DNA from: Macrostomum lignano
Lineage: Eukaryota
Direction of reading: 5' to 3'
Length of the DNA: 64,000 nt
Assembly: GCA_002269645.1 (NCBI GenBank)
Contig: NIVC01000544.1
Location: forward strand, 186,001-250,000
Part shown: one piece after another, positions 14,138 to 63,721 of the stretch
How the letters are laid out: every line of letters starts with the position of its first letter
Position numbering within the stretch: the first letter of the stretch is position 1
Translations under genes and position numbers: made by a program
The notes under the pieces: generated by a model
What the model saw: the letters and a program-made list of their open reading frames with translations, nothing else
Databases searched by the model: none
What the model was told of the DNA's origin: nothing

Positions 14138-14276
14138 CTTTCCGAGCCCTTTTGACTGATTTAAAGCAGCATGCAGTGATGAAAAAGGGAATTTTGTAGC
14201 TTTTGTAGAGTTACGTCACGTGTTAAGCAAATTGTAGGACAACTGGACTCTATGGACTGTGTATGCAGACTAGCTT

Positions 14277-32036: not shown

Positions 32037-33109
32037 TCAGACAAAGGTTCCGGGAGACCAGGCCACAATACGAGCATCGCAGGCCAGTTTCGGTGAGTAG
32101 GAATGCGGCAGATCCCTGAGCAGCGGGTGCAGCCGAAGCCCAGACAGAGTCTCATTAAACAGAAGGTGCGAAGGCACAAATGCGCTGATGTACAGGCGGT
32201 GCCGCTGTGGATCCGACAGTCGAAGCCGACTAACGGCCGTTCGCAACTGACCGGCCAGATGTCCGACTGCGTCCGATTCTGTCCGGCAGTAGATGTTCAG
32301 CACCAGGTGGAGCCCGCCAACCGGTACTGAGGTCCAGTTGGCTATGCTAACACCGGTTACTTCACCGGTGGGCACCAGGCCGGGCTCCGAGTAACTGGCC
32401 ATCACCTGGGGCGCGGTTTTGGTGACAAATGTGACAGTTGGTCATTATTGGAGTGACAGATGTGACAGCTGGTCATTATTAGAGCGACAGACGTGACAGC
32501 CGGTCATTATAACAGTGACAAATTTGAGTGACATAGAAAATTAATAAAGCAATATAAACTAACCTGATGCAGAAATTTTCTCCAAATAAGCAGATTGCCT
32601 CTAGAGATTGTCAGCGGTTCCTTAGCAACAAGTATATACTGTTGAGGCTTCAACAGGCGGTTCTCTGTACTGCTGCAGACCGACTCTGAGCACAAGAAGT
32701 CAACAGGATTGGACACTAAGTGAGGCTCCTCTAGACTAGAGGAAGGCCCAGTAGCAAATCTATTAGCTAAAGCAGCCAGGTAGTCGGCCGAGCATTCAAA
32801 TCCCAGCTGCTGGTTGAGCAGCACAACTCTAGTTGTCAGGTCACCGCCCAGCTGATCGAAATAACGCCTAGTATAAGTTGGCAGACTATAGACTCCGCAG
32901 CACATTACAACAGGGTGCAGGCGCGGTTTTAACATTTCAAACAGTGCTTGTGAACTTCGAGCTGCCAACGAGTAGGCGCGAAAGTCCTTGACTGTGCGGC
33001 CGCCACCGTAGGACAAGTTACGGCCTTCGTGGTTAACGATAGCGTAGCCGAATGACAACTGCGGTGATTATAATGGATGGGGCACGTCTTATTAAATAGA
33101 TATATAGAT

Positions 33110-33182
<73 letters not shown>

Positions 33183-33687
33183 GATAGATAGATAGATCGT
33201 CTCTACACATCTATCTCGTAAATAACCTCGTATCAGGATAGATAGTCAGTCAGTCAGTGAGTGAGTGAGTCAGTCAGTCAGTACTCACAACTCTATTGCT
33301 GGCCTTATCAACAGTCACAATGCCGGTCCGGTGTTGGCTGCTCACAATATACTCATAGTAGTCAGGCAAATAGTCAAGGCCATAGTGAATATCTGGCTCA
33401 ATGCTGAGCACCTGATCTCTGTCGTCTAGAGTAGCTAAACGTAACTGCAAATTCTCTCTTGGAATAGGCAGACGAGACCATCGTTCGCGTAGAATATCTT
33501 GTCGTTTAGCGTTAACAGAGACTGGCTGCTTTGATGAGCTCTCCCTATTATTGGCAAATGCGGTAGTAGTATTACTTTTAGTAGAATATAAAATACACTG
33601 CTGCGTTGTCGAAGTCTTCGTTCTCATATAGAATGACAAAGTCAGTAGGAAGTTCGGACTAGGAGTCACTCGGTTCCAAGGCTTCAT
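32037..33687 (-). CDS. GNAT acetyltransferase, NAT16/histidine N-acetyltransferase-like, copy D (intact)
   Basis: Exons 33687-33289, 33058-32564 and 32405-32037, with the same intron positions as copy C. Motifs LQLRLATLDDRDQV..I..DIHYGLDYLPDYY and YAIVNHEGR...GGGRT...FR. Confidence 0.78.
33100..33280. repeat. (GATA)n and (CAGT)n microsatellites in copy D intron 1
   Basis: Direct reading. Confidence 0.95.
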
Positions 33688-37664: not shown

Positions 37665-40600
37665 TCACAGTAGCGTGGCACGAGCCTGCTGCTGCTGCTG
37701 CTGCTGCTGCTGATGCCCAGGCGGTAACAATTGAATTCCACCGTTGCCACTAACGCTGACGCTGCCGTTGCCATGGTGATAGTATTTTTTACCGTTGCTA
37801 CTATTAGTAGTAGCATATCCGCGTTGTTGCTGCTGTTGATGATGAAATCCGTTACTGTTAGATTCGGCCTTCTGAGATGAACTGCTTGAGACCACCCAGA
37901 CTACAATTTTATCCTCCCAAACTGGAACTACTTGATTGTCGTCGGCAACTTCCATTTTTGTTGGCTTTTGTAGCTGTTGCTGCTGCTGCTGTTGCGGCAC
38001 CTTGAACAGGTAGCGCCAAGGACTGAATGCGGGCCCACCGGGCTGCTGCTGATGCTGAGAAGAATTTGGCGGAAGCTGGATGCAACGTTTGATGTCGCCC
38101 AGTGTTACCTGTAGATTTGTTTGTAAATTTATTAATATTTTTCTCATTTATATTAGAGATTAAGGCAACTAAAAATACAATTAACAATAACTGCATGAAG
38201 AGAAGATCGAGCAGCAGGACCTGGTGAGGAAGCTGAATGAATAGATGATGAAGATTTGTGACCTGGTGATGAAGCTGAATGAATAGATAATGTAGCTGTG
38301 TTACCTGGTGATGAAGTTGAATGAATAGATGATGAAGCTTTGTTACCTGGTGATGAAGCTGAATGAATAGATAATGTAGCTGTGTTACCTGGTGATGAAG
38401 TTGAATGAATAGATGATGAAGCTTTGTTACCTGGTGATGAAGCTGAATGAATAGATAATGTAGCTGTGTTACCTGGTGATGAAGCTGAATGAATAGATAA
38501 TGTAGCTGTGTTACCTGGTGATGAAGCTGAATGAATAGATGATGTAGCTGTGTTACCTGGTGATGAAGTTGAATGAATAGATAATGTAGCTGTGTTACCT
38601 GGTGATGAAGCTGAATGAATAGATAATGTAGCTGTGTTACCTGGTGATGAAGTTGAATGAATAGATAATGTAGCTGTGTTACCTGGTGATGAAGTTGAAT
38701 GAATAGATAATGTAGCTGTGTTACCTGGTGATGAAGTTGAATGAATAGATAATGTAGCTGTGTTACCTGGTGATGAAGCTGAATGAATAGATGATGAAGC
38801 TGTGTTACCTGGTGATGAAGCTGAATGAATAGATGATGAAGCTTTGTTACCTGGTGATGAAGCTGAATGAATAGATGATGAAGCTTTGTTACCTGGTGAT
38901 GAAGCTGAATGAATAGATAATGTAGCTGTGTTACCTGGTGATGAAGCTGAATGAATAGATGATGAAGCTTTGTTACCTGGTGATGAAGCTGAATGAATAG
39001 ATAATGTAGCTGTGTTACCTGGTGATGAAGTTGAATGAATAGATGATGAAGCTTTGTTACCTGGTGATGAAGCTGAATGAATAGATAATGTAGCTGTGTT
39101 ACCTGGTGATGAAGTTGAATGAATAGATGATGAAGCTTTGTTACCTGGTGATGAAGCTGAATGAATAGATAATGTAGCTGTGTTACCTGGTGATGAAGCT
39201 GAATGAATAGATGATGAAGCGGTATGACCATATGATGAAGCTGTATGAACCAGTGATGATGAAGCTGTGTGAAATTGTGATGATGAAGCTGTATGAAATA
39301 GTGATGATGAAGCTGTATGACCTGGTGATGATGAAGCTGTATGATCAAGTGAGGATGAAGCTGAATGGCTACTAGATAATAAAGCTGGATTATGAGATGA
39401 TAAAGCCGTAGAAGCCACAGGTGATGATGACGCCAATTAACAATGATAAAACGGTATGATAGAATTAAATAAAAATCTTTGTGACTGAATGACACAACAG
39501 CTGCGGTGAATTCTTACCTGCCCAATGGGCTTAGGTATATTAAGCAGGTAAGGCGCGGCACTCCGCTCAGTATAGTACAGACACCTGGTACTAACTGGGC
39601 CACTAGTACAACTACTGCCAATTGCCGAACCAGTAGTATCTGGCACATCTAATCGATGTATAGGAAAACCAGGCACAGCAGACAGTGGCAATCGTTTTAA
39701 TTGCATTTTACGTTGCTGTGGAGTTAAACTTTGCTGACTAGCCGATGTAGTAGCGCTAGAATTAGCTGAGGACAGGTGCAAAGCGTGCTCCAGGGTGTCT
39801 AGCACCACCTGTGAACCGGTGTCGCCAGGTGGCAGAGCCAATCTCAACCGGCTGATGCACTGGGCAGCCACGGCTGCCTCGGATCCGGCAGAGTCGCCGA
39901 CAGAATGAGCAGCACCAGCGCCAGCAGTGGAAGTAGTAGCAGACTCAGAATTTGAGCATTTCAATCGATCCAACTCGCTGCTCAGAGCGGCGACGCACTG
40001 CTGATGCTCAGCTACTAGGCGGCGAAGTCGTTCATTGTCGTTACGAGCGGCGGCGGCTTCGCGTTCGGCCATTTCGCGACGCTGTTCGCTGTAGCGCAGA
40101 GTGTATTGCAGCTCTTCGACCTTGGAGAGTTGGGGATGGAGTTCGAGTAGCATTGTACATAACCGTGAGGGATTATGACTTGATTGGGGAGATGGAATCT
40201 ATGGTTCAAGAATTCAGAATCAAGACTCTTGCACTTCAGGATCATGACTCTTGAACTTAAGGACCAAGAGTATCGAAGCTCAGGGATCAAGACTCTTAGA
40301 CTCCAGGACCAATACTCTTAGACTTCAAGATTCATACTCTTAGACTTCAGGATTCATACTATTAGACTTCAGGATTCATACTATAAGACTTCAGGATTCA
40401 TACTATTTGACTTCAGGATAAAGACTCCCAGGCTTCAGGATACAGACCCTCAGGCAGTCAGGCTTCAGGATCAAGAGCCTCATGCTTCAGGATCAAGACT
40501 CTCAGACTTCAGGATCAAGAGCCTCATGCTTCAGGATCAAGACTCTCAGACTTCAGGATCAAGAATCTCATGCTTCAGGATCAAGAATCTCATGCTTCAA

Positions 40601-41968
40601 GATCAAGAGCCTCCGACTTCAGGATCAAGAGCCTCATGCTTCAGGATCAAGAATCTCATGCTTCAGGATCAAGAGCTTCATGCTTCAGGATCAAGAATCT
40701 CATGCTTCAGGATCAAGAGCCTCCGACTTCAGGATCAAGAGCCTCATGCTTCAGGATCAAGAATCTCATGCTTCAGGATCAAGAGCCTCATGCTTCAGGA
40801 TCAAGAATCTCAAGCTTCAGGATCAAGAGCCTCATGCTTCAGGATCAAGAATCTCAAGCTTCAGGATCAAGAGCCTCATGCTTCAGGATCAAGAGCCTCA
40901 TGCTTCAGGATCAAGACTCTCAGACTTCAGGATCAAGAATCTCAGGCTTCAGGATAAAGACTTCCAGGCTTTAGGATGAAGACTTTTAGGCTTTAAGACA
41001 CAGACTCTCAGGCTTCAGAAACAGGCTCGGGAATAGAATCAGAGCTTTAAGCAAGGCGCTGCAGTGTTTAACACAAGGATTTTAGGGTTCAGAATGATGG
41101 AATCTCGACAGAAATCAAACAAATCTACCTTTAGCGTCAGTTCATCCACCGTCTGCTGCTGTTGCTCCTGTTGCTCCTGCTGGTGCATCTTGTCGCCGCT
41201 GCCGCAGAAACAGCCGTCCATTCCTGAATGATTCGACGAACAGTTGGATTCCGCAGACATTGGAGAAGCTGCACCAGACGACAGAGCGTCCTGCAACCGT
41301 AGTATAAGGCTGCGCATCTCTTTCAATTCACTTCTGGCCTCTTCCAATTCGCTGCCATTGCCGCTAGCAGACGAGGCCGCTGTAGAACCGGAGCCTAGCA
41401 ACTGAGCAGTAGGTGAGCTGGCATGAGAACCGGCAGATATTGTAGGCGTAGCTCCGTGTCTGGGACTGTTGCAGCCGCTAGATAGCCAACCGGAAGCTGG
41501 CGTCTCTTCGCCATTATTATTATGATTATGATTATTAGCCGATGACAGCTTCTTTCTAGCTCGGGACAGAGTAGCTCCGTCAGCGGCTTGTTGCTGTTGA
41601 GCGGCCTGCTTTTGATGTCGAACAGAAGCTGGCTTATAGTGAGCAGCTAATGCCAAGATTAATCTCATAACAGCTTTAACATCGCCTGACATGACTGCGC
41701 GCGGTTCAATGCGATGCATTCTGATTCGGCGGGATCGCATGAAATCCAGTACTACTAGGATGTTCTGCTCTCGATCGTAGTCGTCTATGGGATACCAGAT
41801 GATGTCTTCTAGTTTAACGCCGGCAACAGTTTCAATTAAGACTGCTAGGCTAGTGCCGTTTAATATGCTGGGATCTGTTAGATCTTTTACTGGCGGATAG
41901 CCTGGTCGCTTCTTCAACTGACTGTTCACCCAGGCTGTGTAGGATGGCACCTGTTGGCTCCAGTCCAT
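37665..41968 (-). CDS. DIXDC1: Dixin (CH domain, coiled coil, DIX domain)
   Basis: Exons 41968-41129, 40198-39518 and 38108-37665 (phase 0). CH: SYTAWVNSQLKKRP...IRMH....MRLILALAAHYKP. DIX: TRCLYYTERS..PYLLNIPK..QVTLGDIK...YLFK...VPVWEDKIVVWV. Confidence 0.92.
38215..39430. repeat. 42-bp minisatellite in DIXDC1 intron 2
   Basis: ggtgatgaagctgaatgaatagat(a/g)atg(t/a)agct(g/t)tgttacct repeats about 24 times, then degenerates. Confidence 0.95.
40215..41020. repeat. 22-bp minisatellite (caggatcaagagcctcatgctt) in DIXDC1 intron 1
   Basis: Tandem units. Confidence 0.93.
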
Positions 41969-42884: not shown

Positions 42885-43615
42885 GGCTGGTGGGCCAGCA
42901 ACTGAGGATTTGGGAGGCTAGCTCAGCAACTGAGGATCTGGGAGGCTGGTGCCCCAGCAACTAAGGATCTAGGAGGCTGGCCCAGGAACTGAGGATCTGG
43001 GAGGCTGGCCCAGCAACTGAGGATCTGGGAGGCTGGACCAGTACTGAGGATCTGGGAGGCTGGCCCAGAAACTGAGGATCTGAGAGGCTGGACCAGTACT
43101 GAGGATCAGGGAGGCTGCCCAGCAACTGAGGATCAGGGAGGCTGGCCCAGCAACTGAGGATCAGGGAGGCTGGCCCAGCAACTGAGGATCTAGGAGGCTG
43201 GCCCAGCGACTGAGGATCTAGGAGGCTGGCCCAGCAACTGAGGATCTGGGAGGCTGGACCAGTACTGAGGATCTGGGAGGCTGGCCCAGAAACTGAGGAT
43301 CTGAGAGGCTGGACCAGTACTGAGGATCAGGGAGGCTGGCCCAGCAACTGAGGATCAGGGAGGCTGGCCCAGCAACTGAGGATCAGGGAGGCTGGCCCAG
43401 CAACTGAGGATCAGGGAGGCTGGCCCAGCAACTGAGGATCTAGGAGGCTGGCCCAGCGACTGAGGATCTAGGAGGCTGGCCCAGCAACTGACGATTCGGG
43501 AGGCGGGCCCAGCAACTGAGGATCTGGGAGGCTGGCCCAGCAACTGAGGATCTGGGAGGCTGGCCTAGCAACTGAGGATCTGGGAGGCTGGCCCAGAAAC
43601 TGAGGATCTGGCCAG
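42885..43615. repeat. 28-bp minisatellite, array 3 (intergenic)
   Basis: Same unit as arrays 1 and 2. Confidence 0.95.
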
Positions 43616-44305
43616 AAGGAAGCCAGCTCATTAACTTACAAATTGGAGAATATTTGTATCAAAATTACAAACAAAAATATTCGTAAACACAGTAGCAAAT
43701 TTTACACATCGATAATGACTTGTTTGAAAATTTTGTACTGGCATAGGGGACAATGTAATCATACACAATAATGTAGAGAAAAGACAGCAACACAGACAGC
43801 ACAAAGACCGGGATGTAAAAGTATGCACGAAAAATATTATAAATAGCGAAACCGATTTCCTACACGACTTCACTCTCTCAGACAGAATAAATCCATCTAC
43901 TTCTGTCTAAAAGTATTTCCGTTTAATTTTATCTTAGATGGAAAATGCATCTAATGTTACTAAATAAATATGTGTGAAATTTATGCAAATTTTCAACTTT
44001 CAAACAGCTCTAGTCCACTCTCCGATTGTCTATGGCTAAAAGCCAAACACAGTGTCGAAAAACTCGTCTACAGTTGTCATCCCGCACTGAAACTTCAATT
44101 CGTCACAAATCGATGATTAGATATTACATAAGTAGTATGTTATGTAAATACCTTGAACCAAAAAACATTAATATAAATAAACAGAGTAAGCTTTTAACTG
44201 AAATGAATTACGATGAATTTTTAGAATAGACGACATCATTAAGTTTTGCTGCTGGTTACAAAAGTACTGTTAAAGTGCACTAAAGAATCACTAGACAGAC
44301 TGGGT

Positions 44306-47300
44306 CTACACTCGAACCCAGCTCTTGCCAACTGAGTAGTATATTGCGCCCAGTTTAGCAGGCTCAACGCCCATTCGATAGGCCAATAGAATGAGTGCAT
44401 TGAGTCCGCACACGGCCAGGAATCCGTGGGTGATCCACCGCCTCGGCGACGTCATCACGGCGGCATCCGCGATGGCCACGTGACCGAATTGTTTCACCCG
44501 TTCGGCGAATTCGATGTCCTCGAGAAAGGGCCAGTCACGGTAGCCGCCAGACATGGTGTAGTAGTAGGCGTGGATGAACAGACCCTGCGGGGAGAGAGAG
44601 CGGGTGGCAAGTAATACCGGTACTACAGATGCATTTAAACAGCCTTACTCTGTTGCTGGGCCAGCCTCCCAGATTCTGTTGCTGGGCCAGCCTCCCAGAT
44701 TCTTTGTTGCTGGGCCAGCCTCCCAGATTCTCTGTTGCTGGGCTAGCCTCCCAGATTCTCTGTTGCTGGGCCAGCCTTCCAGATCCTCAGTTGCTGGGCC
44801 ACCAGGCTCCCAGATCCTCAGTTGCTGGGCCACCAGGCTCTCAGATCCTGAGTTGCTGGGCCAGCCTCCCAGATTCTCTGTTGCTGGGCCAGCCTCCCAG
44901 ATTCTCTGTTGCTGGGCCAGCCTCCAAGATCCTCAGTTGCTGGGCCACCAGGCTCCCAGATGCTCAGTTGCTGGGCCACCAGGCTCCCAGATCCTCAGTT
45001 GCTGGGCCACCAGGCTCCCAGATCCTCAGTTGCTGGGCCAGCCTCCTGGATCGTCAGTTGCTGGGCCAGCCTCCCAAATCCCGGTTTCTGGGTTAACCTC
45101 TCAGATTACCGGCCGCTCACCTGACTGCCAATAGGCATCTCGTACCGCCTGCACCTCCAATTAGTGTGCAGCTCCAGCAGCAGGGTTCTCAAAGCCCACG
45201 GTATGTCCTTAGTGAAGCACATCTCGTTAGGCAGCTTCAAATGGAAGGTGAACGCCCCGGCAACAATACCGGGCTTGCTCAGCGAGTGCACGATGACGTC
45301 ATCCCAGTTCTCAGGCAGCGAGCTGTCGGCATGCAGCACCAGATAGTAGGCGCCGCGGGCGAATTGAAGGCCGTAGCGAATCATTTGCCCGCGGCCGGTC
45401 GGCAGACTGTCAGGCAGGCGGCGCACCTCGATGCTGACTTTGCGCAGCTGGGCTCGCGGCAAACAGGTGCTGGCCCGGTGGCGTACGAACTCGCGAATCA
45501 CCTGGGGAATAATGGTAATAGATAAGTCAGATAGAAAGCGATGTGAATAATGATAACCGAATGGACTATGATTATGACACAGTAGACTATTATGATGATA
45601 TACTAGACTTTGATGACCCACTAGATTATGATGATGACCCAATAGACTATGATGATGACCCACTAGACTATGATGATGACCCATTAGACTATGATGATGA
45701 CCCAATAGACTATGATGATGACCCACTAGACTATGATGATGACCCAATAGACTATGATGATGACCCACTAGACTATGATGATGACCCACTAGATTATGAT
45801 GATGACCCACTAGACTATGATGATGACCCACTAGACTATGATGATGACCCACTAGACTATGATGATGACCCACTAGACTATGATGATGACCCACTAGACT
45901 ATGATGATGACCCACTAGACTATGATGATGACCCAATAGACTATGATGATGACCCACTAGACTATGATGATGACCCACTAGACTATGATGATGACCCATT
46001 AGACTATGATGATGACCCAATAGACTATGATGATGACCCACTAGACTATGATGATGACCCACTAGACTATGATGATGACCCACTAGACTATGATGATGAC
46101 CCACTAGACTATGATGATGACCCACTAGACTATGGTGATGATCCACTAGACTATGATGACCCACCAGACTTTGATGACCCACTAGACTTTGATGACCTAC
46201 TAGACTTTGATAACCCACTAGACTATGGTGATGACCCAACAGACGATGATGATGACCCATTAGACCAATACAAGTAATTTAATAGAAAAAATTCAAAGCA
46301 TGTTTTACAATTTAAAAACTTTTGCCTACTGCATACGCGGGTATTCAACAAACCTGCACAGTACCATCCACAGATCTGCCATCAACGATAACGATTTGTA
46401 GGTGTCGTTTCTTAGAAAAATTAAATAACAAATTCCGCAACGAAGTCTCAATATGATCGGCCTCGTTTCGAGCAGGAATGAGAACGGTCACGGTGTCGCT
46501 CATGAACAGGCAACTAGGGATGCCCAGCTCTGTCTCAACCAGGCCCAAATCGTCAATCGTGTCAAGATCACGTAAAATCGGCCGCAGGGAGGCGCAGACG
46601 ATGTCCAGCAGCAGAGCGTTAGCAAACTGCAAATGGGGAGAGGGAATTTCTGTCTGTGAGACTGCGTCAAAACGAATGGGGACCTGAGACTGCGGCACAA
46701 GCAGTTAATGATCTGGGAGGCTCGCCCAGCAACTGAGGATCTGGGAGGCTGGCCCAGCAACTGAGGATCTGGGAGGCTGGTGGCCCAGCAACTGAGGATC
46801 TGGGAGGCTGGCCCAGCAACTGAGGATCTGGGAGGCTGGCCCAGCAACTCAGGGTCTGGGAGGCTGGTGGCCCAGCAACTCAGGGTCTGGGAGGCTGGTG
46901 GCCCAGCAACTCAGGGTCTGGGAGGCTGGTGGCCCAGCAACTGAGGATCTGGGAGGCTAGTGGCCCAGCAACTCAGGGTCTGGGAGGCTGGTGGCCCAGC
47001 AACTCAGGGTCTGGGAGGCTGGTGGCCCAGCAACTCAGGATCTGGGAGGCTGGTGGCCCAGCAACTGAGGATCTCGGAGGCTTGGCCAGCATATCGGAAA
47101 TATTGGAAAAGTGAACAACTGTAGCACACATAATTTAAATCAAAATGGGACAGTCCTGAGAAAGTGGCGTGATTTGAATCTACGCACCGAATAGGACAAG
47201 AGCATACTTAACCAACTCAAAAATAAGATAAGCCAAAATTAATTTGAAGTTTATATGTCAAAATAAGGTCATTTGCAAGTTATTCTCTTAGGCCATGTAA

Positions 47301-47967
47301 TACTAGTAGTAAGATCTGAGCTGCTATTACAATTTAAAAAATCCTAACCACCTAGTCAAGTCTAGGCTGCCCCCAAATGTTTTCAAGCAGGAATCGTTTC
47401 TTTTTGAGGGCACGCGGGCCCTGGGTCTAAATTAGAGAAAAAAGCTTAAATGGGTACAATGTTGAATTCAGCTGCTCAGACTTCAGAGGCTATAAAAAGT
47501 GCAACAGCAAGGTTTGCGATTGTTTTTCCTAGATAAGGCAAAATGCACCTATACACAGAAGTAATTCAATCTGCTGTGTCTGCTGACTGTCTGCTTTGAG
47601 AAAAGCGACTCCAGTCAGGTAGAAACGACTTGGCTGGAGACATGGGGCTTGATTTTTTGAGAGAAACTAACACGATTTATTTTTGATTGGTTGTCTCGTT
47701 AAAAGCGATTCAAAATAAAAAAATTGAAGAGAGATGAGGGAGAGAGAGAGAGAGAGGGAAAGAGAGAGAGGATGAGGGAGAGGAAGAGAAGCAGGGGTGA
47801 GGGGAGGGGGAGACGAAGAGAGGGAGAGGGAGAGACGCGGAGCTAGAGAAGAGAGAGACGGAGAGAGAAGAAAGAGGCGGAGAGAAAGGTGGAGAGAGGG
47901 GGAGAGACGCGGAGAGGGAGAGGGAAAGGGAGAGAGAGAGAGAGGCGGAGAGAAAGAGAGACGGAGA

Positions 47968-48012
<45 letters not shown>

Positions 48013-48032
48013 GAGAGAAAGAGAGACGGAGA

Positions 48033-48095
<63 letters not shown>

Positions 48096-51000
48096 GGCGC
48101 CTCCAATCTCAGGCACTGACACGGTGAAAAGGACTGAAATAAGTCAATTTTATTTGAGTAGCCAGAGAGGAGGGCGCCTCCAATCTCAGGCACTGACACG
48201 GTGAAAAGGACTGAAATAAGTCAATTTTATTTGAGTAGCCAGAGAGGGAGGCGCCTCCAATCTCAGGCACTGACACGGTGAAAAGGACTGAAATAAGTCA
48301 ATTTTATTTGAGTAGCCAGAGAGGAGGGCGCCTCCAATCTCAGGCACTGACACGGTGAAAAGGACTGAAATAAGTCAATTTTATTTGAGTAGCCGCGGAG
48401 AGGGAGAGGGAAAGGGAGAGAGGCGGGGAGAGAGAGGGAGAGGGAAAGGGAGAGAGGCGGGGAGAGAGAGGGAGAGGGAAAGGGAGAGAGGCGGGGAGAG
48501 AGAGGGAGAGGGAAAGGGAGAGAGGCGGGGAGAGAGAGGGAGAGGGAAAGGGAGAGAGGCGGGGAGAGAGAGGGAGAGGGAAAGGGAGAGAGGCGGGGAG
48601 AGAGAGGGAGAGGGAAAGGGAGAGAGGCGGGGAGAGAGAGGGAGAGGGAAAAGGAGAGAGGCGGGGAGAGAGAGGGAGAGGGAAAAGGAGAGAGGCGGGG
48701 AGAGAGAGGGAGAGGGAAAGGGAGAGAGGCGGGGAGAGAGAAGGAGAGGGAAAGGGAGAGAGGCGGGGAGAGAGAAGGAGAGGGAAAAGGAGAGAGGCGG
48801 GGAGAGAGAAGGAGAGGGAAAGGGAGAGAGGCGGGGAGAGAGAAGGAGAGGGAAAAGGAGAGAGGCGGGGAGAGAGAAGGAGAGGGAAAGGGAGAGAGGC
48901 GGGGAGAGAGAGGGAGAGGGAAAGGGAGAGAGGCGGGGAGAGAGAGGGAGAGGGAAAGGGAGAGAGGCGGGGAGAGAGAGGGAGAGGGAAAAGGAGAGAG
49001 GCGGGGAGAGAGAGGGAGAGGGAAAAGGAGAGAGGCGGGGAGAGAGAGGGAGAGGGAAAGGGAGAGAGGCGGGGAGAGAGAAGGAGAGGGAAAGGGAGAG
49101 AGGCGGGGAGAGAGAGGGAGAGGGAAAAGGAGAGAGGCGGGGAGAGAGAAGGAGAGGGAAAGGGAGAGAGGCGGGGAGAGAGAGGGAGAGAGGCGGAGAG
49201 AAAGAGAGACGGAGAAGGGAGAGAGAGAGGGGGGGGAAGAGGGAGATCGAGGGAGAGAGTGAAAGGGTAGAGGGCGGAGGGGAGACAGGCAACGATAGTG
49301 GAGAGGTATGGAGAGGTCAGTAGCAAATCAGTTGTAAATAAAGGAGCTACACAAAATCTTAAAAAAAAACAATAGCACTGCAATAGTAAGCGGGTTGAGA
49401 GATATTAAAACGTCAGTCAGCCAGAAACTCGTTTTTTACCCAGCGAAGTTAAGCCTGACTGAATCAGCGATATGCATACCGGTAGTTAAGAAGAAAGAAA
49501 GGATCCGGTATTAACACTCACCTGACAGTCGAACACGGTGCTAGAGCCCCACAGTATGTTGCGGAACAGGCAGTTAAGATGACGCCGCACAGGCCTCCTA
49601 CTAGCCGCAAGCAGGTAGAGCCCGCCGCTGCCAGTCTTGCCCAGTACGAGGCCGGCGCCGGAGTCCAAACAGCGGAGAGCTTGCATAGCGTGCTGATCGG
49701 ATAGGGCGGGAACATCCGAGCTTAGTAGGACCACCTGCGGACAAGGTTGAGGATACGATGTCAAGTTTCTCACCAAAGAACCAAGTCTCAAGGGGGGGGG
49801 GGCGTTAGAAGAAAGCAATTCTTAGGGAGAGATGCCGTTGACGAGAATCCAGTCTTAGGGAGAGATTCTCTTAAAGAGAAGTAAATTCTAATAATGAGAA
49901 TCAAGTCTCAGGGGGGATTCTAATGATGAGAATCAAGTCTCATAGGGGAATTCTAATGATGATAATCAAGTCTTATGGGGAGATTCTAATGATGAGAATC
50001 AAGTCTTTTAGGGAGATTTCTAATGATGAGAATCAAGTCTTGGGGGGGATTAATTCTAATGATGAGAATTAAGTCTAAGGGTGGATTCTGATGATGAGAA
50101 ACAAGTCTCAGAGGGGGGAGATTCTAATGATGAGAATCAAGTCTTATGGGGAGATTCTAATGATGAGAATCAAGTCTTATGGGGAGATTCTATGATGAGA
50201 ATCAAGTCTTATGGGGAGATTCTGATGATGAGAATCAAGTCTCGGAGGGAGAGATTCTAATGATGAGAATCAAGTCTCGGAGGGAGAGATTCTAATGATG
50301 AGAATCAAGTCTAAGGGGGGATTCTGATGATGAGAATCAAGTCTTATGGGGAGATTCTATGATGAGAATCAAGTCTTATGGGGAGATTCTGATGATGAGA
50401 ATCAAGTCTCGGAGGGAGAGATTCTAATGATGAGAATCAAGTCTAAGGGGGGATTCTGATGATGAGAATCAAGTCTTATGGGGAGATTCTATGATGAGAA
50501 TCAAGTCTTATGGGGAGATTCTGATGATGAGAATCAAGTCTTATGGGGAGATTCTATGATGAGAATCAAGTCTTATGGGGAGATTCTGATGATGAGAATC
50601 AAGTCTCGGAGGGAGAGATTCTAATGATGAGAATCAAGTCTCGGAGGGAGAGATTCTAATGATGAGAATCAAGTCTCGGAGGGAGAGATTCTAATGATGA
50701 GAATCAAGTCTTATGGGGAGATTCTGATGATGAGAATCAAGTCTCGGAGGGAGAGATTCTAATGATGAGAATCAAGTCTCGGAGGGAGAGATTCTAATGA
50801 TGAGAATCAATTCTCGGGGGAGAGATTCTAATGATGAGAATCAAGTCTAAGGGGGGATTCTGATGATGAGAATCAAGTCTTATGGGGAGATTCTAATGAT
50901 GAGAATCAAGTCTCAGGGGGGGTCTAATGGTGAGAATGAAGTCTAAGGGGCAGAGATTCTAATGATGAGAATCAAGTCTCAGTGGGGGTTCTAATGGTGA

Positions 51001-53754
51001 GAATCAAGTTTAAGGGGGGGGGGGATTCTGATGATGAGAATCAAGTCTCGGAGGGAGAGATTCTAATGATGAGAATCAAGTCTCAGAGGGAGAGATTCTA
51101 ATAATGAGAAGCAATTCTCAGGTGGAATTCTGATGATAAGCAATTCTCAGGGAGAGACTCTCTTGATGGGAATCAAGTCTCAGGGAGAGATTCTCTGGGA
51201 GGGAAGTAGCTCTCAGTGGAGGGAAGATTCTCATGGAGAAAAGCTTTTAGATTCTCAATTTTCGTTGTCACGTCTCGTTGGGAGATGCTGCTCATGATCA
51301 CTTAATTTAGGAAGTAGAAAACGACACAAGCATAAACAACAACCAGCAGAACGACCTGATCGTAACCGCGTCCAAACAGATTCCACAAGGCCGACTCCAG
51401 CGTGGCTCCGATGGTGCACCCGGACTGCGGCAGAGGCGCAGCGGCACCAGCACTGCCAGCCGACGAAGAGGACAGAGCGAAACCGTTTGAGTCGTACTTG
51501 GCGTGCCCGTTCCTATGACGCCTTGGCTGCGGGCCCAGGTGAGCGATACGACAGGGGGCTCCGTTGGGATCTGAAATAAGTAGGGGTTGTACTTTTGTTT
51601 TTTACACAGATCCTCCAAAATGTAATACATAGGAGCATAGGACCCCATAGGTGACATGCACAGGAGAGAACATTTAGGTGAAATACTTCAGGAATTAACA
51701 ACCTTCAGGAAGTACATCATCGGATTTAACAACCTTGAGGAAGTACATCATCGGATTTAACAACCTTCAGGAAGTACATCATTGGAATTAACAACCTTCA
51801 GGAAGTACATCATTGGATTTAACAACCTTCAGGAAGTACATCATCAGATTTAACAACTTTCAGGAAGCACATTTAACAACCTTCAGGAAGTACATCATCG
51901 GATTTAACAACCTTCAGGAAGTACATCATCAGATATAAAAAAACCTTCAGGAAGTACATCATCAGATTTATAACAACTTTCAGGAAGTACATCATCGGAT
52001 TTAACAACCTTCAGGAAGTACATCATCGGATTTAACAACCTTCAGGAAGTACATCATTGGAATTAACAACCTTCAGGAAGTACATCATTGGATTTAACAA
52101 CCTTCAGGAAGTACATCATCAGATTTAACAGCTTTCAGAAAGCACATTTAACAACCTTCAGGAAGTACATCATCGGATTTAACAACCTTCAGGAAGTACA
52201 TCATCAGATATAAAAAACCTTCAGGAAGTACATCATCAGATTTATAACAACTTTCAGGAAGTAGATCATCAAATTTAACAACCTTCAGGAAGTTCACTAT
52301 CAGATTTAACAACTTCAGGAAGTACATCATCAGCTTTAACAACCTTAAGGAAGTACATCATCAGATATAAAAAACCTTCAGGAAGTACACTATCAGATTT
52401 AACAACATCCAAGAAGTACTACATCATCAGATTTAATAACCTTCAGGAAGTACATCATCAGATTTATAACAACCTTCAGGAAGTAGACCATCAGATTTAA
52501 TAACTTCAGGAAGTACATCATCAAATTTAACAACCTTCAGGAAGTTCACTATCAGATTTAACAACTTCAGGAAGTACATCATCAGCTTTAACAACCTTAA
52601 GGAAGTACATCATCAGATATAAAAAAACTTCAGGAAGTACACTATCAGATTTAACAACATCCAAGAAGTACTACATCATCAGATTTAATAACCTTCAGGA
52701 AGTACATCATCAGATTTATAACAACCTTCAGGAAGTAGACCATCAGATTTAATAACTTCAGGAAGTACATCATCAGCTTTAACAACCTTCAGGAAGTACA
52801 TCATCAGATGCAATGCAACAACCTTCAGGAAGCACGATGTACACTACGCGACATTTGGTCAAGTAAGCAAGTACATTAAAAGTGCTCCTCAATAAGGTAC
52901 AGCTTTAGGAGGATTCGAGAAGAGTCGAATAGAAGCCAAACTAAACCAGCAATAAACGCATCTCACTAACCATGCTTAGCAGATTGGTACGGGGGCGAAT
53001 CTCTAGATTTAAGTTGCTCCAAATAGCGCTCAAAAGCGCCAAATTCCATAGCATCTTCAACGCAGAAGCAATCATCTTCTGTATCGTCCATACCGTCCGC
53101 ACCATTCCAGATCTCCGGCTCTGGAGCGTTGTTAAAGTGCAACCCATCCTCGGACGAAACATCGTCCACCTGGCCTTCTCCAATTCGGCCATTATTAGTT
53201 GCTAAGCGACCATTTCTATCTCTACCATTGCTATTAGAATTAACAGAAGACGATTTAGATTGGGAAAATTCTACATGCCTATCGATGCATTCCATCCATA
53301 ACTGTACCGGGCGGTTACACACGGTGGCTTCGCAGACCACATGGCACTGGTCTTTATAGGCTATGTAGATATCAGTGTCAGTCAAACGATGACGCAATGG
53401 TTGCAATCTGCGTATTAGACTCTCTGATAGCACTCGCATCACCAAGGCGGAGTTGCTCGGCCCTATATAGGGTATTAGACGTGATTTAGTTCGACCAGGA
53501 TATGGCAGTCGAGTGAACACAACGATAGCCCTTCGAGATCTCTGAGTATTGTGAAACAGTTTCGCTACAGACTGAACCAGCGGAGCAAGAAATTGCAGAG
53601 TAACCAGCCAATTTAACAGCTGCACTGGCCAGCGACAAACGTGACCAGCCACTCTGACAGCGATGCGAATGGTTTCTATAGCAACTAGCCAGATTAGCAG
53701 CGCATAGGTGTGCAGCATGCTGCGCTTTCGTCTGAGCATAGAACCGTGCAGCAT
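44306..53754 (-). CDS. Fused DUF2064 (TIGR04282-like) and GT2 (TIGR04283-like) transferase, about 733 aa, 6 exons
   Basis: Exons 53754-52971, 51570-51356, 49734-49522, 46683-46354, 45501-45121 and 44584-44306 total 2202 nt in one open frame. N-half motifs: FTRLPYPGRTKSRL, PQSGCTIGATLESA, VVLLSSDVP, LVLGKTGSGGLYLL, ILWGSS, RDLDTIDDL. C-half motifs: VLIPARNEA, IVDGRSVDGT, GRGQMI..G, LVLHADSSLP, AGAF, PIGSQGLF, GGY.DWPFLEDIEF, TSPRRW, GVEPAKL..YY. Start codon uncertain (53754, 53736 or 53718). Confidence 0.88.
44645..45080. repeat. 28-bp minisatellite, array 4, in reverse orientation, in the last intron of the fusion gene
   Basis: ctcagttgctgggccagcctcccagatc units. Confidence 0.93.
45560..46262. 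repeat. 21-bp minisatellite (atgatgatgacccactagact) in fusion-gene intron 4
   Basis: About 32 units. Confidence 0.95.
46705..47095. repeat. 28/31-bp minisatellite, array 5, in fusion-gene intron 3
   Basis: Same unit as arrays 1-4. Confidence 0.93.
47725..49255. repeat. GA-rich microsatellite and ~30-bp polypurine minisatellite, enclosing a 77-bp repeat x4 (48090-48395)
   Basis: (GA)n runs; gagaggcggggagagagagggagagggaaagg units; ggcgcctccaatctcaggcactgac occurs four times. Confidence 0.93.
49790..51240. repeat. ~33-bp minisatellite (gattctaatgatgagaatcaagtc...) in fusion-gene intron 2
   Basis: About 40 units. Confidence 0.93.
51690..52830. repeat. 31-bp minisatellite (aacaaccttcaggaagtacatcatcggattt) in fusion-gene intron 1
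   Basis: About 36 units. Confidence 0.93.
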
Positions 53755-63300: not shown

Positions 63301-63721
63301 TTTAGCGCCACAGGCACTCATTTTGGCGCCACAGGCACTCACTTTAGCGCCGCAGGCACTCATTTTAGCGCCGCAGGCACTCATTTTAGCGCCGCAGGCA
63401 CTCATTTTAGCGCCGCAGGCACTCATTTTAGCGCCGCAGGCACTCATTTTAGCGCCGCAGGCACTCATTTTAGCGCCACAGGCACTCATTTTAGCGCCGC
63501 AGGCACTCATTTTAGCGCCACAGGCACTCATTCTAGCGCCGCAGGTACTCATTCTAGCGCCGCAGGTGCTATATTTAAGTGCCCAGAAACAAAATTATTG
63601 ATTTCCACAACGGGTCACAAGGTGGGGTTGGTGGACAAAGCATTGTAATGTCCCCCATAGCTTTTACTGGGGGGGGGTACATGTCCCCCTTGTCTCCCCC
63701 CCCTCCGTGGCGACGCCCCTA
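60304..63721. mobile_element. hAT-like MITE expanded by a ~3.1-kb internal 21-bp minisatellite (gcactcattttagcgccgcag)
   Basis: Ends caggggcgtcgccatgg / ccgtggcgacgccccta; flanking direct repeat tggactac (60296-60303 and 63722-63729; atggactac if read as 9 bp); array ~60415-63570. Confidence 0.85.

What the first reader, a model, noticed from the sequence alone, without database searches (positions are those of the whole stretch)
44306..53754. Intron-containing animal gene fusing two bacterial arsenosugar/selenodomain-associated transferase families
Seen: six exons splice into one ~733-aa ORF, with a DUF2064 N-half and a GT2 C-half joined within exon 4 (RDLDTIDDL...VLIPARNEA). Established: TIGR04282 (DUF2064, related in fold to CofC/MobA nucleotidyltransferases) and TIGR04283 are mainly prokaryotic families. 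They cluster with the radical-SAM enzyme ArsS, and are annotated as rSAM/selenodomain-associated or arsenosugar-biosynthesis glycosyltransferases largely on gene-neighbourhood grounds. Inference: the animal may encode a bifunctional activate-and-transfer enzyme for arsenosugar or other metalloid-sugar chemistry, products in marine animals usually attributed to diet. Five spliceosomal introns argue against contamination and for an old, domesticated gene (horizontal transfer or patchy retention). Animal-specific additions are a hydrophobic N-terminal segment and a long low-complexity insert in DUF2064. Two consensus-like positions differ: GSGG for DGG, and GSQ for GDQ.
Basis: partly seen in the sequence, partly recalled or inferred. 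Interest (0 to 1): 0.85.

Follow-up and report, generated by a model that had tools for sequence, protein, structure and literature searches.

The report
Flatworm copy of bacterial-type two-domain transferase
This is a real, intron-containing flatworm (Macrostomum) gene for a two-domain sugar-transferase of bacterial type. The gene proves to be ancient and widespread in marine animals, from sponges to amphioxus, its function is unknown, and the flatworm copy is unusually altered.

Summary
On the minus strand, six GT-AG exons (53754-44306) splice into one ORF that joins a DUF2064/TIGR04282 domain to a GT2/TIGR04283 domain, and the junction lies inside exon 4. The product is best modelled as 714 aa (acceptor at 46626), not ~733.

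The window comes from Macrostomum lignano or a very close relative. Its nearest database protein is the 714-aa BOX15_Mlig000337g1.

- The fusion is not an animal invention. Hundreds of bacterial proteins have the same domain order.
- The gene is not flatworm-specific. Orthologues occur in sponge, molluscs, annelid, nemerteans, brachiopod, priapulid, echinoderms, hemichordates and amphioxus, plus a few marine protists.
- Sponge, scallop and amphioxus share 8-10 intron positions, so the gene is ancestral to animals.

The flatworm copy is highly derived.
- None of its introns sits at an ancestral position.
- It has a ~165-aa disordered insert.
- It scores below both NCBIfam cut-offs.
- It alone, of 150 homologues, lacks both near-invariant Asp residues (DGG→SGG, GDQ→GSQ).
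- It is still under purifying selection (dN/dS 0.11).

The arsenosugar idea rests on ArsS lying near the gene in only 10 of 83 bacterial loci. No animal ArsS could be tested. Function remains unknown. A membrane-anchored activate-then-transfer enzyme is the best guess.

The parts
52971..53754 (-). Exon 1 (784 nt, ends in phase 1). Contains the ATG at 53754, an N-terminal hydrophobic region (aa 1-71, two predicted helices), the first part of DUF2064 with the FTRLPYPGRTKSRL motif (aa 73-134) and the start of the disordered insert.
   Evidence: TIGR04282 profile positions 1-58 match here. AF2 helices 7-37 and 42-71. Donor is GTTAGT.
51571..52970 (-). Intron 1, mostly a 31-bp minisatellite (about 36 copies).
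51356..51570 (-). Exon 2 (215 nt). Contains the rest of the Macrostomum-specific low-complexity insert, then DUF2064 resumes (QSGCTIGATLESALWNLFGRGYDQ).
   Evidence: Acceptor TTTCAG, donor GTCGTT.
49735..51355 (-). Intron 2, with a 35-bp minisatellite (about 39 copies). Its first 12 nt (GTCGTTCTGCTG) encode the same VVLL as the first 12 nt of exon 3.
49522..49734 (-). Exon 3 (213 nt), the DUF2064 core (VVLLSSDVP...GKTGSGGLYLL...ILWGSSTVFDCQ). Codon 49629-49627 is Ser369, where 146 of 149 homologues have Asp (DGG motif).
46627..49521 (-). Intron 3, containing AG-rich 34-bp, 77-bp and 31-bp tandem arrays. An alternative in-frame acceptor at 46690/46689 would add 21 aa.
   Evidence: P0001 uses the 46626 acceptor.
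46354..46626 (-). Exon 4 (273 nt). Contains the C-terminal end of DUF2064 (RDLDTIDDL), a short linker and the start of GT2 (VLIPARNEA...VDGRSVDGT). The domain junction lies inside this one exon.
45502..46353 (-). Intron 4, a 21-bp minisatellite (about 35 copies). It reads as a His-rich pseudo-ORF.
45121..45501 (-). Exon 5 (381 nt), the GT2 core with the HAD (DXD-equivalent) motif. Codon 45126-45124 is Ser621, where 146 of 149 homologues have Asp (YGDQ motif).
44585..45120 (-). Intron 5, a 28-bp minisatellite. The same unit family occurs in intron 3 and elsewhere in the window.
44306..44584 (-). Exon 6 (279 nt including the TAG stop). It is the GT2 C-terminal part, with the LEDIEF (probable catalytic base) and TSPRRW motifs.
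   Evidence: TIGR04283 profile positions 152-221, 59.8 bits on this exon alone..
41042..41968 (-). First coding exon of the downstream neighbour, a calponin-homology-domain gene. The synteny is conserved with both M. lignano Mlig_3_7 contigs. Given as context, not part of the gene.

Best explanation
What it is. The locus is a functional Macrostomum gene. It is the flatworm orthologue of an uncharacterised gene that was already present, with introns, in the last common ancestor of sponges and bilaterians. That gene survives mainly in marine invertebrates and a few marine protists.

Protein anatomy.
- An N-terminal membrane-association region comes first.
- Next is a DUF2064/TIGR04282 domain. 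It has the MobA/CofC-like nucleotidyltransferase fold and a PGxxKTRL phosphate-binding motif.
- Last is a GT2/TIGR04283 GT-A glycosyltransferase domain.
- The two-domain arrangement was inherited ready-made from bacteria, where the same fusion is common.

Most likely mechanism (inferred, not shown).
- Domain 1 uses an NTP to activate a phosphorylated sugar-like substrate to an NDP derivative.
- Domain 2, an inverting GT2, transfers that moiety to an acceptor.
- In most animal orthologues a TM helix is followed by a basic cluster. This points to the catalytic domains working on the cytosolic face of a membrane.
- The substrate is unknown. The only pointer is the bacterial neighbourhood: ArsS in a minority of loci, and more often a DedA/VTT membrane protein and a flavoprotein disulfide reductase.

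The Macrostomum copy is strongly derived.
- All ancestral introns are replaced by five introns at new positions.
- It carries a ~165-aa disordered insert.
- It differs at 11 of 61 near-invariant positions, including Asp to Ser in both family signature motifs.
- Purifying selection is nevertheless strong. The protein therefore still does something, probably with altered substrate handling, or with reduced or lost catalysis in one or both domains.
For: Shown:
- Gene model and frame. The structure is identical in two Mlig_3_7 contigs.
- Family hits.
- The DUF2064 domain aligns with PDB 3CGX by sequence and by fold (TMt 0.74). The C-terminal half matches GT-A GT2 enzymes such as 6P61 (TMt 0.78), SpsA, TarS/TarP and WrtF.
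- The AF2 model has pLDDT above 90 across both domains, and the insert is disordered.
- The fusion is widespread. Nearly all of the top 150 of 8828 hits cover query residues ~308-706 within one 430-530-aa protein.
- The closest relatives are all animals on chromosome-scale assemblies. Each half separately has its best hits in animals.
- Amphioxus, sponge and scallop share 8-10 intron positions and phases. Macrostomum shares none.
- Amphioxus, sea urchin and Vitrella pass both NCBIfam cut-offs. Macrostomum fails both.
- dN/dS is 0.107 between the window copy and the Mlig_3_7 copies (29 synonymous and 10 non-synonymous differences). Exons are 96-99% identical and introns about 88-91%.
- Residues kept: K90/R92, D340, D424/D426, D486/D491, H552xD554, E644-D645, S668xR670. 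Residues lost: D369, D621, G338, Y372, G488, Q535, F550.
- A TM helix followed by a basic cluster is present in most animal orthologues and absent in bacteria.
- Bacterial context: a bona fide ArsS (TIGR04167, 367.7 bits) lies immediately upstream in L003 and within 10 kb in 10 of 83 loci. DedA/VTT is present in 18 loci, a Pyr_redox_2 flavoprotein in 18 (and fused in P0108), and DUF547 in 8.

Inferred: the nucleotidyltransferase and inverting-transfer chemistry, from the established properties of the MobA/CofC and GT2 folds.
Against: - No member of TIGR04282 or TIGR04283 has, to my knowledge, a biochemically demonstrated reaction. A full-text search for DUF2064 found no paper.
- DUF2064 itself has a GT-A-like fold. 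The whole model also matches two-GT-A-domain enzymes such as K4CP, LARGE1 and LH3. Both domains could therefore be glycosyltransferases rather than activator plus transferase.
- Macrostomum lacks two Asp residues that are conserved in 146 of 149 homologues, so catalysis may be impaired.
- Its N-terminus has charges inside the hydrophobic stretch and basic residues before it. It is a less canonical anchor than in other animals.
- In the neighbour-joining bootstrap, Macrostomum sits among the eukaryotic sequences in only 70 of 100 replicates. The eukaryotic clade is recovered in about 20 of 100.
- No transcript data were examined here.
Confidence: 0.6

Rival explanations
1. The enzyme makes arsenosugars or other metalloid sugars endogenously in the animal. 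It would act downstream of an ArsS-type radical-SAM enzyme: activate 5-deoxy-5-dimethylarsinoyl-ribose, then transfer it to glycerol or a similar acceptor.
For: - NCBIfam names both families 'arsenosugar biosynthesis glycosyltransferase'.
- A true ArsS (367.7 bits, cut-off 300) sits directly upstream of the fused gene in L003. It is adjacent or within 10 kb in loci from six or more phyla.
- An inverting GT2 would give the beta-riboside linkage found in arsenosugars (established chemistry, inference).
- Almost all eukaryotic carriers are marine.
Against: - Only 10 of 83 bacterial loci have ArsS within 10 kb. DedA/VTT and a flavoprotein reductase are more frequent neighbours.
- None of the multi-domain bacterial forms examined is fused to a radical-SAM domain.
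- No ArsS-like sequence was found in the window or in the Macrostomum, amphioxus or sponge loci.
- No paper linking these families to a demonstrated arsenosugar step was found.
- Macrostomum has lost two signature Asp residues.
- Whether animals encode ArsS at all could not be tested.
Confidence: 0.15
2. In Macrostomum specifically, the protein is a pseudoenzyme or has taken on a new function. One or both active sites would be dead, and the protein would be kept for binding, scaffolding or a different reaction.
For: - Of 150 homologues, it alone lacks both D369 and D621.
- It differs at 11 of 61 near-invariant positions, against a median of 2.
- It scores below both NCBIfam cut-offs, while other animals pass.
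- It carries a large disordered insert.
- dN/dS of 0.107 nevertheless shows retained function.
Against: - The core GT-A catalytic set is kept: D486, HxD, ED and SxRRW. So are the nucleotidyltransferase residues K/R (aa 90/92), D340 and DxD (aa 424/426).
- Ser can sometimes substitute for Asp in hydrogen-bonding roles.
- Flatworm proteins are generally fast-evolving (my own knowledge).
Confidence: 0.25
3. The module handles a 5-deoxy-5-thio (or seleno) pentose derived from methylthioadenosine or another SAM by-product, rather than arsenic. It would build a glycoconjugate or lipid-linked sugar, by analogy with the mycobacterial methylthioxylose pathway.
For: - Some bacterial forms are GT87-GT2-DUF2064-GT2 or GT2-DUF2064-GT2 fusions.
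- In M. tuberculosis, the GT2 MtxS (Rv0539) makes decaprenyl-phospho-methylthioxylose, and MtxT (Rv0541c) transfers it (PMC12088412, PMC8780516).
- DedA-family neighbours are frequent. DedA proteins have been linked to polyprenyl-phosphate recycling (my own knowledge).
Against: - That the intervening gene Rv0540 is a DUF2064 protein is only my recollection. It could not be verified here.
- The structural neighbours of the GT2 domain are not the polyprenyl-phosphate GT2s.
- There is no direct evidence in any animal.
Confidence: 0.1
4. The locus is bacterial contamination, a recent flatworm-specific horizontal transfer, or two separate genes wrongly merged.
For: - Both domains belong to families that are mainly prokaryotic.
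- Bacterial fused proteins are 40-43% identical to the amphioxus orthologue.
Against: - There are five spliceosomal introns full of Macrostomum-type minisatellites.
- The flanking genes are animal genes.
- The gene is present with conserved synteny on two other M. lignano contigs.
- Orthologues across Metazoa share intron positions.
- The domain junction lies inside exon 4, and every orthologue is fused.
Confidence: 0.02

Closest known systems
Bacterial fused TIGR04282+TIGR04283 proteins. IMG calls them 'rSAM/selenodomain-associated transferase 2/transferase 1' and NCBI calls them 'TIGR04283 family arsenosugar biosynthesis glycosyltransferase'. An example is P0265 from a Desulfobacterales-like metagenome contig.
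   Same: - Same two domains in the same order, with a short linker.
- Same conserved motifs: PGxxKTRL, GSDxP, DVDxxxDL, NEA, VDGGSxDxT, LHAD, MED, TSxRRW.
- 28-35% identity to the Macrostomum protein.
   Different: - The bacterial proteins are about 450 aa, with no N-terminal hydrophobic region and no insert.
- They keep DGGYYL and YGDQ and pass both NCBIfam cut-offs (262 and 213 bits).
- They are sometimes encoded directly after ArsS.
- The Macrostomum protein is 714 aa and spliced, has SGG and GSQ, and scores 147.5 and 80.4 bits.
The uncharacterised metazoan orthologue group. Examples are Branchiostoma floridae XP_035676070.1, Sycon ciliatum XP_065183132.1, Mizuhopecten XP_021354888.1, Lytechinus XP_041458696.1 and Magallana gigas XP_019918188.3.
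   Same: - Same architecture.
- They are the best database hits for each half of the Macrostomum protein.
- They have an added N-terminal hydrophobic segment.
- They are nuclear, intron-containing genes.
   Different: - The other animals' proteins are 490-555 aa and lack the insert.
- They keep both signature Asp residues and differ at only 0-5 of the 61 conserved positions.
- They share a set of 9-10 intron positions that Macrostomum lacks entirely.
- Their N-terminus is a cleaner TM helix followed by a basic cluster.
PDB 3CGX, a putative nucleotide-diphospho-sugar transferase (DUF2064) from Desulfovibrio G20. More distantly, CofC/MobA nucleotidyltransferases.
   Same: - The fold and sequence match the N-terminal domain (phmmer E 2.7e-9; Foldseek E 8.8e-13, TMt 0.74).
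- There is a weak CofC HMM hit (TIGR03552).
   Different: - 3CGX is a single-domain protein with no assigned reaction.
- It has DGG where Macrostomum has SGG.
- CofC/MobA similarity is at fold level only.
GT-A fold GT2 glycosyltransferases with solved structures: Leptospira 6P61, SpsA (1QG8/1H7L), TarS/TarP, the WrtF fucosyltransferase and PcManGT (6YV7).
   Same: - GT-A fold.
- An N-terminal nucleotide-binding Asp, a DXD-type motif (here HAD), and an acidic residue about 90 residues downstream (ED) as the likely catalytic base.
   Different: - Sequence identity is only 12-21%.
- Their donors and acceptors differ from one another and say nothing about this protein's substrate.

Membership tests
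TIGR04283 (NCBIfam equivalog, GT2) | Whole-protein HMM score at or above the curated cut-off of 182 bits | tested here: not met
   147.5 bits, profile positions 2-221 of 221. Amphioxus scores 221.5, sea urchin 191.3 and Vitrella 194.9, all passing. Sycon scores 177.2, just below.
TIGR04283 (NCBIfam equivalog, GT2) | GT-A fold with a nucleotide-binding Asp, the LHAD (DXD-type) motif, the ED motif and the TSxRRW motif | tested here: met
   The motifs VDGRSVDGT, LVLHADSS, LEDIEF and TSPRRW are present. H552 and D554 are invariant in all 149 homologues. The fold matches GT2 structures. PF00535 scores 44.8 against a cut-off of 23.3.
TIGR04283 (NCBIfam equivalog, GT2) | Near-invariant YGDQ motif (Asp in 146 of 149 homologues) | tested here: not met
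   The motif is IGSQ, with Ser621 at codon 45126-45124.
TIGR04282 / PF09837 (DUF2064) | HMM score above threshold | tested here: inconclusive
   Pfam PF09837 scores 41.9 against a gathering cut-off of 25.8, so that test is met. NCBIfam TIGR04282 scores 80.4 against a curated cut-off of 134, so that test is not met. The match is split in two by the insert.
TIGR04282 / PF09837 (DUF2064) | N-terminal F(T/S)RxPxPGxxKTRL motif, the GSDxP motif and the C-terminal DxDxxxDL motif | tested here: met
   FTRLPYPGRTKSRL and RDLDTIDDL are present. SSDVP keeps the Asp but has G338S.
TIGR04282 / PF09837 (DUF2064) | Near-invariant DGGYYL motif (Asp in 146 of 149 homologues) | tested here: not met
   The motif is SGGLYL, with Ser369 at codon 49629-49627. 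The alignment to 3CGX confirms the register.
TIGR04282 / PF09837 (DUF2064) | Fold of the solved family member 3CGX | tested here: met
   3CGX is the top Foldseek hit, with E 8.8e-13 and TM (target-normalised) 0.74. The model has pLDDT above 90 in this domain.
Metazoan DUF2064-GT2 orthologue group | Closest relatives of both halves are animal proteins, and the protein nests among them in a tree | tested here: met
   The ten best hits after the M. lignano protein itself are all animals. Each half separately ranks animals first. In the neighbour-joining bootstrap it nests among eukaryotic sequences in 70 of 100 replicates, which is only moderate support.
Metazoan DUF2064-GT2 orthologue group | The shared ancestral intron set (9-10 positions and phases common to sponge, scallop and amphioxus) | tested here: not met
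   Macrostomum's five introns fall at alignment columns 1531, 1649, 1817, 2276 and 2500. None coincides with the shared set 1294, 1660, 1762, 1852, 2147, 2339, ~2451, 2494, (2529) and 2605. This is read as intron turnover, not as evidence against orthology.
Metazoan DUF2064-GT2 orthologue group | N-terminal TM helix followed by a basic cluster just before the DUF2064 domain | tested here: inconclusive
   Macrostomum has a hydrophobic N-terminal region of about 70 aa (maximum Kyte-Doolittle 19-residue mean 1.85). It contains internal charges, and the basic cluster RRKR precedes it. Most other animals have a clean helix followed by a K/R run.
ArsS-linked (arsenosugar) pathway | Co-occurrence with an ArsS (TIGR04167) radical-SAM partner | not testable with these tools
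   No ArsS-like sequence was found in the 64-kb window or in L001, L002, L007 or L008 (tblastn). The animal genomes as a whole could not be searched. In bacteria, ArsS lies within 10 kb in 10 of 83 loci.
ArsS-linked (arsenosugar) pathway | Demonstrated activity on an organoarsenic sugar | not testable with these tools
   The literature searches found no biochemical characterisation of either family.

The most novel reading that the evidence does not exclude
Marine animals from sponges to amphioxus, plus some marine protists, have vertically kept a bacterial-type activate-and-transfer enzyme. In bacteria this enzyme is wired to the radical-SAM enzyme ArsS. If the link holds, these animals themselves would build 5-deoxy-5-(arsenic, sulfur or selenium)-pentose glycoconjugates such as arsenosugars, which are normally credited to algae and diet. 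In Macrostomum, Asp is replaced by Ser in both domains. That would be consistent with both domains recognising the same group on one shared substrate, and with that group having changed in this lineage.
Probability: 0.12. Interest if true: 0.85.

Novelty: new variant of a known kind. Interest (0 to 1): 0.55.

Why it matters
No member of this enzyme family has a demonstrated reaction. Even so, the family is named for arsenosugar synthesis in bacterial annotation.

This work shows that a bona fide orthologue group exists across marine Metazoa. It has ancestral introns and an added membrane anchor. That gives tractable animals (oyster, sea urchin, amphioxus, Macrostomum with RNAi and transgenesis) in which to ask what the family does. 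It also makes the old question of whether marine animals make any of their own organoarsenic, or related, sugars directly testable.

It corrects the picture for this locus as well. The fusion is inherited, not invented. The flatworm copy is the odd one out. It is therefore a natural experiment on which residues are essential.

If the arsenic link fails, the result is still an uncharacterised, deeply conserved animal enzyme. It appeared in no vertebrate, arthropod or nematode among the homologues I identified.

Tried and rejected
- The first full-length homologue search was swamped by the low-complexity insert and returned only the M. lignano protein. I solved this with the exhaustive representative search and by re-querying with the amphioxus orthologue.
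- Model A (735 aa, acceptor at 46689) was rejected in favour of model B (714 aa). Model B matches the public annotation and the family spacing.
- Contamination, recent HGT and two separate genes were all rejected.
- Shared introns between Macrostomum and other animals were looked for and none was found. Two of its five introns lie within 3-6 codons of ancestral sites, but that is about what chance would give.
- The ArsS neighbourhood test gave only 10 of 83 loci. PHP and EEP phosphoesterases were seen next to the gene in the first three loci, but tblastn at E 1e-10 did not recover them broadly. The test may be too insensitive for such divergent proteins.
- Literature searches for DUF2064, the TIGR accession numbers, and ArsS together with arsenobetaine found nothing relevant.
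- The Rv0540 = DUF2064 lead could not be verified because Angala et al. 2017 is not in the held library.
- Neighbour-joining with bootstrap does not resolve whether eukaryotes acquired the gene once or several times.
- I ran no further search on ArsS. Only the best 120 hits are listed, and bacterial ArsS would fill that list, so it could not have shown presence or absence in animals.


Full report
**1. What is in the sequence**

The feature lies on the minus strand. Three-frame translation and inspection of the junctions give six exons. Every intron starts with GT and ends with AG.

| Exon | Coordinates |
|---|---|
| 1 | 53754-52971 |
| 2 | 51570-51356 |
| 3 | 49734-49522 |
| 4 | 46626-46354 |
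| 5 | 45501-45121 |
| 6 | 44584-44306 |

Exon 4 has two in-frame acceptors.
- Position 46626 gives 714 aa.
- The 714-aa form equals the public protein P0001, 'hypothetical protein BOX15_Mlig000337g1 [Macrostomum lignano]'.
- It also gives the same 29-residue spacing between the conserved Trp and the DxD motif as the amphioxus orthologue.
- I therefore prefer 714 aa.

The domain junction (RDLDTIDDL ... VLIPARNEA) lies inside exon 4. The two halves cannot be an artefactual merger of neighbouring genes.

**2. Organism and genomic context**

P0001 is encoded on two contigs of assembly GCA_002269645.1. Both have the same six exons and a CH/DIX-domain gene downstream. The window has the same CH-domain neighbour at 41042-41968, plus NUDIX, COA8 and Bcl-2-like exons.
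- Exons are 96-99% identical to those contigs, while introns and flanks are about 88-91% identical.
- Between the copies there are 29 synonymous and 10 non-synonymous differences, giving dN/dS = 0.107.
- The window therefore holds a diverged paralogue or homeologue (or a very close species' copy) of a gene under purifying selection.
- All five introns consist largely of minisatellites with 21-35-bp units.

**3. Family assignment**

| Model | Score (bits) | Cut-off |
|---|---|---|
| PF09837 (DUF2064) | 41.9 | 25.8 (Pfam gathering) |
| PF00535 (GT2) | 44.8 | 23.3 (Pfam gathering) |
| TIGR04283 | 147.5 | 182 (NCBIfam curated) |
| TIGR04282 | 80.4 | 134 (NCBIfam curated) |

The Pfam models are passed. 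The two TIGR models are the best NCBIfam matches, but both fall below their curated cut-offs.

Structure supports both assignments.
- The N-terminal half aligns to PDB 3CGX, a DUF2064 structure.
- An AlphaFold2 model built on 60 homologues is confident over both domains (409 residues with pLDDT of 90 or more) and disordered over residues 137-302.
- Foldseek returns 3CGX first (TMt 0.74), followed by GT-A GT2 enzymes (6P61 with TMt 0.78, SpsA, TarS/TarP, WrtF). It also returns two-GT-A-domain enzymes such as chondroitin polymerase.

**4. The fusion is not an animal invention**

An exhaustive phmmer search of 1.84 billion representatives gave 8828 hits, 205 of them at E of 1e-30 or better.
- Nearly all of the top 150 cover query residues ~308-706 within a single 430-530-aa protein.
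- Many are bacterial: Desulfobacterota, Cyanobacteria, Planctomycetota, Verrucomicrobiota and others.
- These are already annotated as 'rSAM/selenodomain-associated transferase 2/transferase 1', or as a 'TIGR04283 family arsenosugar biosynthesis glycosyltransferase'.
- Longer bacterial forms are GT2-DUF2064-GT2, GT87-GT2-DUF2064-GT2 or Pyr_redox_2-DUF2064-GT2.

**5. The gene is ancient in animals**

The ten best hits after P0001 (33-38% identity) are all animals on chromosome-scale assemblies: Branchiostoma, Owenia, Priapulus, Mizuhopecten, Magallana, Mytilus, Lytechinus, Solemya, Lingula and Ptychodera.
- Further members are Tubulanus, Lineus, Haliotis, Patella, Liolophura, Dreissena, Asterias, Acanthaster, Apostichopus, crinoids, a brittle star, Glandiceps and the sponge Sycon.
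- The protists Diplonema, Ploeotia and Vitrella also carry it.
- All of these proteins are 'uncharacterized'. Some Branchiostoma lanceolatum copies are labelled 'DPM1'.
- Each half of the Macrostomum protein separately has its best hits in animals.

I reconstructed exact exon structures for three animals.
- They were amphioxus (9 introns), Sycon (10 introns) and scallop (10 introns).
- Eight positions coincide exactly in alignment column and phase across all three.
- The rest coincide within a few columns.
- The gene therefore already had these introns in the sponge-bilaterian ancestor.
- Macrostomum shares none of them. Its five introns are at new positions.

Amphioxus, sea urchin and Vitrella pass both NCBIfam cut-offs.

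The neighbour-joining bootstrap is weak on deep nodes.
- Macrostomum nests among eukaryotic sequences in 70 of 100 replicates.
- A single eukaryotic clade is recovered in only about 20 of 100.
- One versus several transfers from bacteria into eukaryotes remains open.

**6. How derived the flatworm copy is**

Among 149 homologues, 61 alignment columns are at least 90% conserved.
- Macrostomum differs at 11 of them.
- The median is 2, and the ten closest animal orthologues differ at 0-5.
- The changes include D369S (DGGYYL to SGGLYL) and D621S (YGDQ to IGSQ). Each Asp is present in 146 of 149 homologues.
- Macrostomum is the only one of the 150 sequences lacking both.
- Other changes are G338S, Y372L, G488R, Q535M and F550V.

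Residues that are kept:
- the PGxxKTRL motif (K90, R92), D340 and D424/D426 in domain 1;
- D486/D491, H552xD554, E644-D645 and S668xR670 in domain 2.

The E644-D645 pair lies about 91 residues after the DXD-type motif. This is the spacing of the catalytic base in SpsA-type GT2 enzymes (my own knowledge of those structures). The classical GT-A catalytic set is therefore intact. The lost Asp residues look like family-specific substrate contacts. This last point is inference.

The 165-aa insert is unique to Macrostomum. Other animal proteins are 490-555 aa long.

**7. Animal-lineage addition**

Most animal orthologues start with a ~20-residue hydrophobic helix, followed directly by a K/R cluster and then the DUF2064 domain. 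Bacterial proteins lack this.
- By the positive-inside rule, this predicts an N-out, C-in anchor with both catalytic domains in the cytosol (inference).
- Macrostomum has a longer and less canonical hydrophobic region. It forms two predicted helices and contains internal charges.

**8. Functional clues from bacteria**

In one Desulfobacterales-like contig the gene directly follows a bona fide ArsS (TIGR04167, 367.7 bits against a cut-off of 300). An EEP phosphoesterase and a PHP protein lie nearby. Two other contigs have a PHP protein next door.

Across 83 loci from different species, the recurrent neighbours were as follows.

| Neighbour | Loci (of 83) | Note |
|---|---|---|
| DedA/VTT membrane protein | 18 | |
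| Pyr_redox_2 flavoprotein | 18 | also found fused, in P0108 |
| ArsS (within 10 kb) | 10 | in six or more phyla, usually immediately upstream on the same strand |
| DUF547 | 8 | |

The ArsS link is real, but it holds in a minority of loci.
- No ArsS, PHP or EEP homologue is present in the window or in the four animal loci fetched.
- Whole animal genomes could not be searched.
- No paper describing a reaction for either family was found.

**9. Most likely mechanism**

By homology, domain 1 is an NTP-dependent nucleotidyltransferase. It has the MobA/CofC-like fold and a K/R phosphate-binding motif. It would convert a phosphorylated sugar-like substrate into an NDP derivative. Domain 2 is an inverting GT2 that would transfer that moiety to an acceptor. 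Fusing the two would channel the intermediate. In animals this would happen on the cytosolic face of a membrane.
- The fold, motifs, fusion, conservation and selection are shown here.
- The chemistry and the substrate are inferred.

The Macrostomum enzyme either handles an altered substrate or has reduced or lost catalysis. Purifying selection says it is not a pseudogene.

Rival readings:
- the arsenosugar pathway (about 0.15);
- a Macrostomum-specific pseudoenzyme or new function (about 0.25, compatible with the main reading);
- a methylthio-pentose-type glycoconjugate pathway like mycobacterial MTX (about 0.1). This rests partly on an unverified recollection that Rv0540 is a DUF2064 protein. 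The roles of MtxS and MtxT are documented in PMC12088412 and PMC8780516;
- contamination, recent HGT or two genes (rejected).

**10. Novelty and verdict**

The gene is already in public databases as a hypothetical protein. The fused family is known in bacteria, so this is not a new kind of system.

What appears to be undescribed:
- the existence of a vertically inherited, membrane-anchored metazoan branch of this family;
- the strongly derived state of the flatworm copy.

I rate it a new variant of a known kind, with interest 0.55. It is worth following because it gives animal models for a family with no known reaction. It also makes the question of endogenous organoarsenic-sugar synthesis in marine animals testable. 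The arsenic link itself is weak at present.

Noticed in passing
window 49723-49745 and 51344-51367 (minus strand): The first 12 nt of intron 2 (GTCGTTCTGCTG, which would read VVLL) nearly repeat the first 12 nt of exon 3 (GTGGTCCTACTA, VVLL). Both are preceded by CAG. This is the signature expected if the intron arose by tandem duplication of an AG|GT-containing exon segment. With only 8 of 12 matches it could also be chance.
   Followed up: partly
window 44585-45120, 45502-46353, 46627-49521, 49735-51355, 51571-52970: Every intron of the gene is filled mainly with minisatellite arrays (units of 21, 28, 31, 34, 35 and 77 bp, plus an AG run). Array lengths differ between the window and the two Mlig_3_7 copies. 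Intron 1, for example, is 1400 nt here against about 2300-2700 nt there.
   Followed up: partly
window 18501-19428, 22581-23378, 42961-43631, 44648-45106, 46710-47082: One 28-31-bp repeat family (unit about CTCAGTTGCTGGGCCAGCCTCCCAGATC) is dispersed across the window, in both orientations. It lies inside introns and between genes, and it creates long spurious ORFs of the 'LGQPPRSSVAGPASQILSCWAS' type.
   Followed up: no
window 46627-46689: An in-frame alternative 3' splice site lies 63 nt upstream of the annotated exon-4 acceptor. It would add 21 aa (SQVPIRFDAVSQTEIPSPHLQ) between the DUF2064 core and its C-terminal DxD motif. It could be an alternative isoform or unused.
   Followed up: partly
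window 27948-29511 and 32507-33687 (minus strand): Two neighbouring ORF pairs look like a tandem duplication of one gene (for example ...EGRNLSYGGGRTV... and ...LQLRLATLDDRDQVLSIEPDIHYGLDY...). Pfam gave no hit for the ORFs tested.
   Followed up: no
window 9933-12212, 14161-15103, 23871-24926, 37909-39495, 60404-63648: Several very long tandem arrays read as open frames of hundreds of codons on one or both strands. The window is unusually rich in satellites. A reverse-transcriptase-like fragment lies at 6271-7297.
   Followed up: no
L003, L015, L022, L027, L041, L042, L046, L050, L066, L083 and others (bacterial loci): The most frequent conserved neighbours of the bacterial DUF2064/GT2 genes are a DedA/VTT-family membrane protein and a ~500-aa Pyr_redox_2 flavoprotein (18 loci each). 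DUF547 follows (8 loci). One protein (P0108, Verrucomicrobiota) fuses the flavoprotein to DUF2064-GT2. This hints at a redox partner that the 'arsenosugar' label does not explain.
   Followed up: partly
P0141 (Phycisphaerae), P0085, P0031, P0034, P0067, P0078: There are larger bacterial fusions, GT2-DUF2064-GT2 and GT87-GT2-DUF2064-GT2. They suggest a three- or four-enzyme glycoconjugate pathway, with a membrane GT-C-type transferase at the end.
   Followed up: partly
P0196, P0199 (Branchiostoma lanceolatum); P0003, P0197, P0200: Amphioxus has at least three paralogues of the gene. Two B. lanceolatum models are named 'DPM1' in the source annotation, which looks like a mis-transfer from a generic GT2 similarity.
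   Followed up: no
P0207 (Dreissena polymorpha): Nearly all eukaryotic carriers are marine. The freshwater zebra mussel also has an orthologue, so strict restriction to marine habitats does not hold.
   Followed up: no
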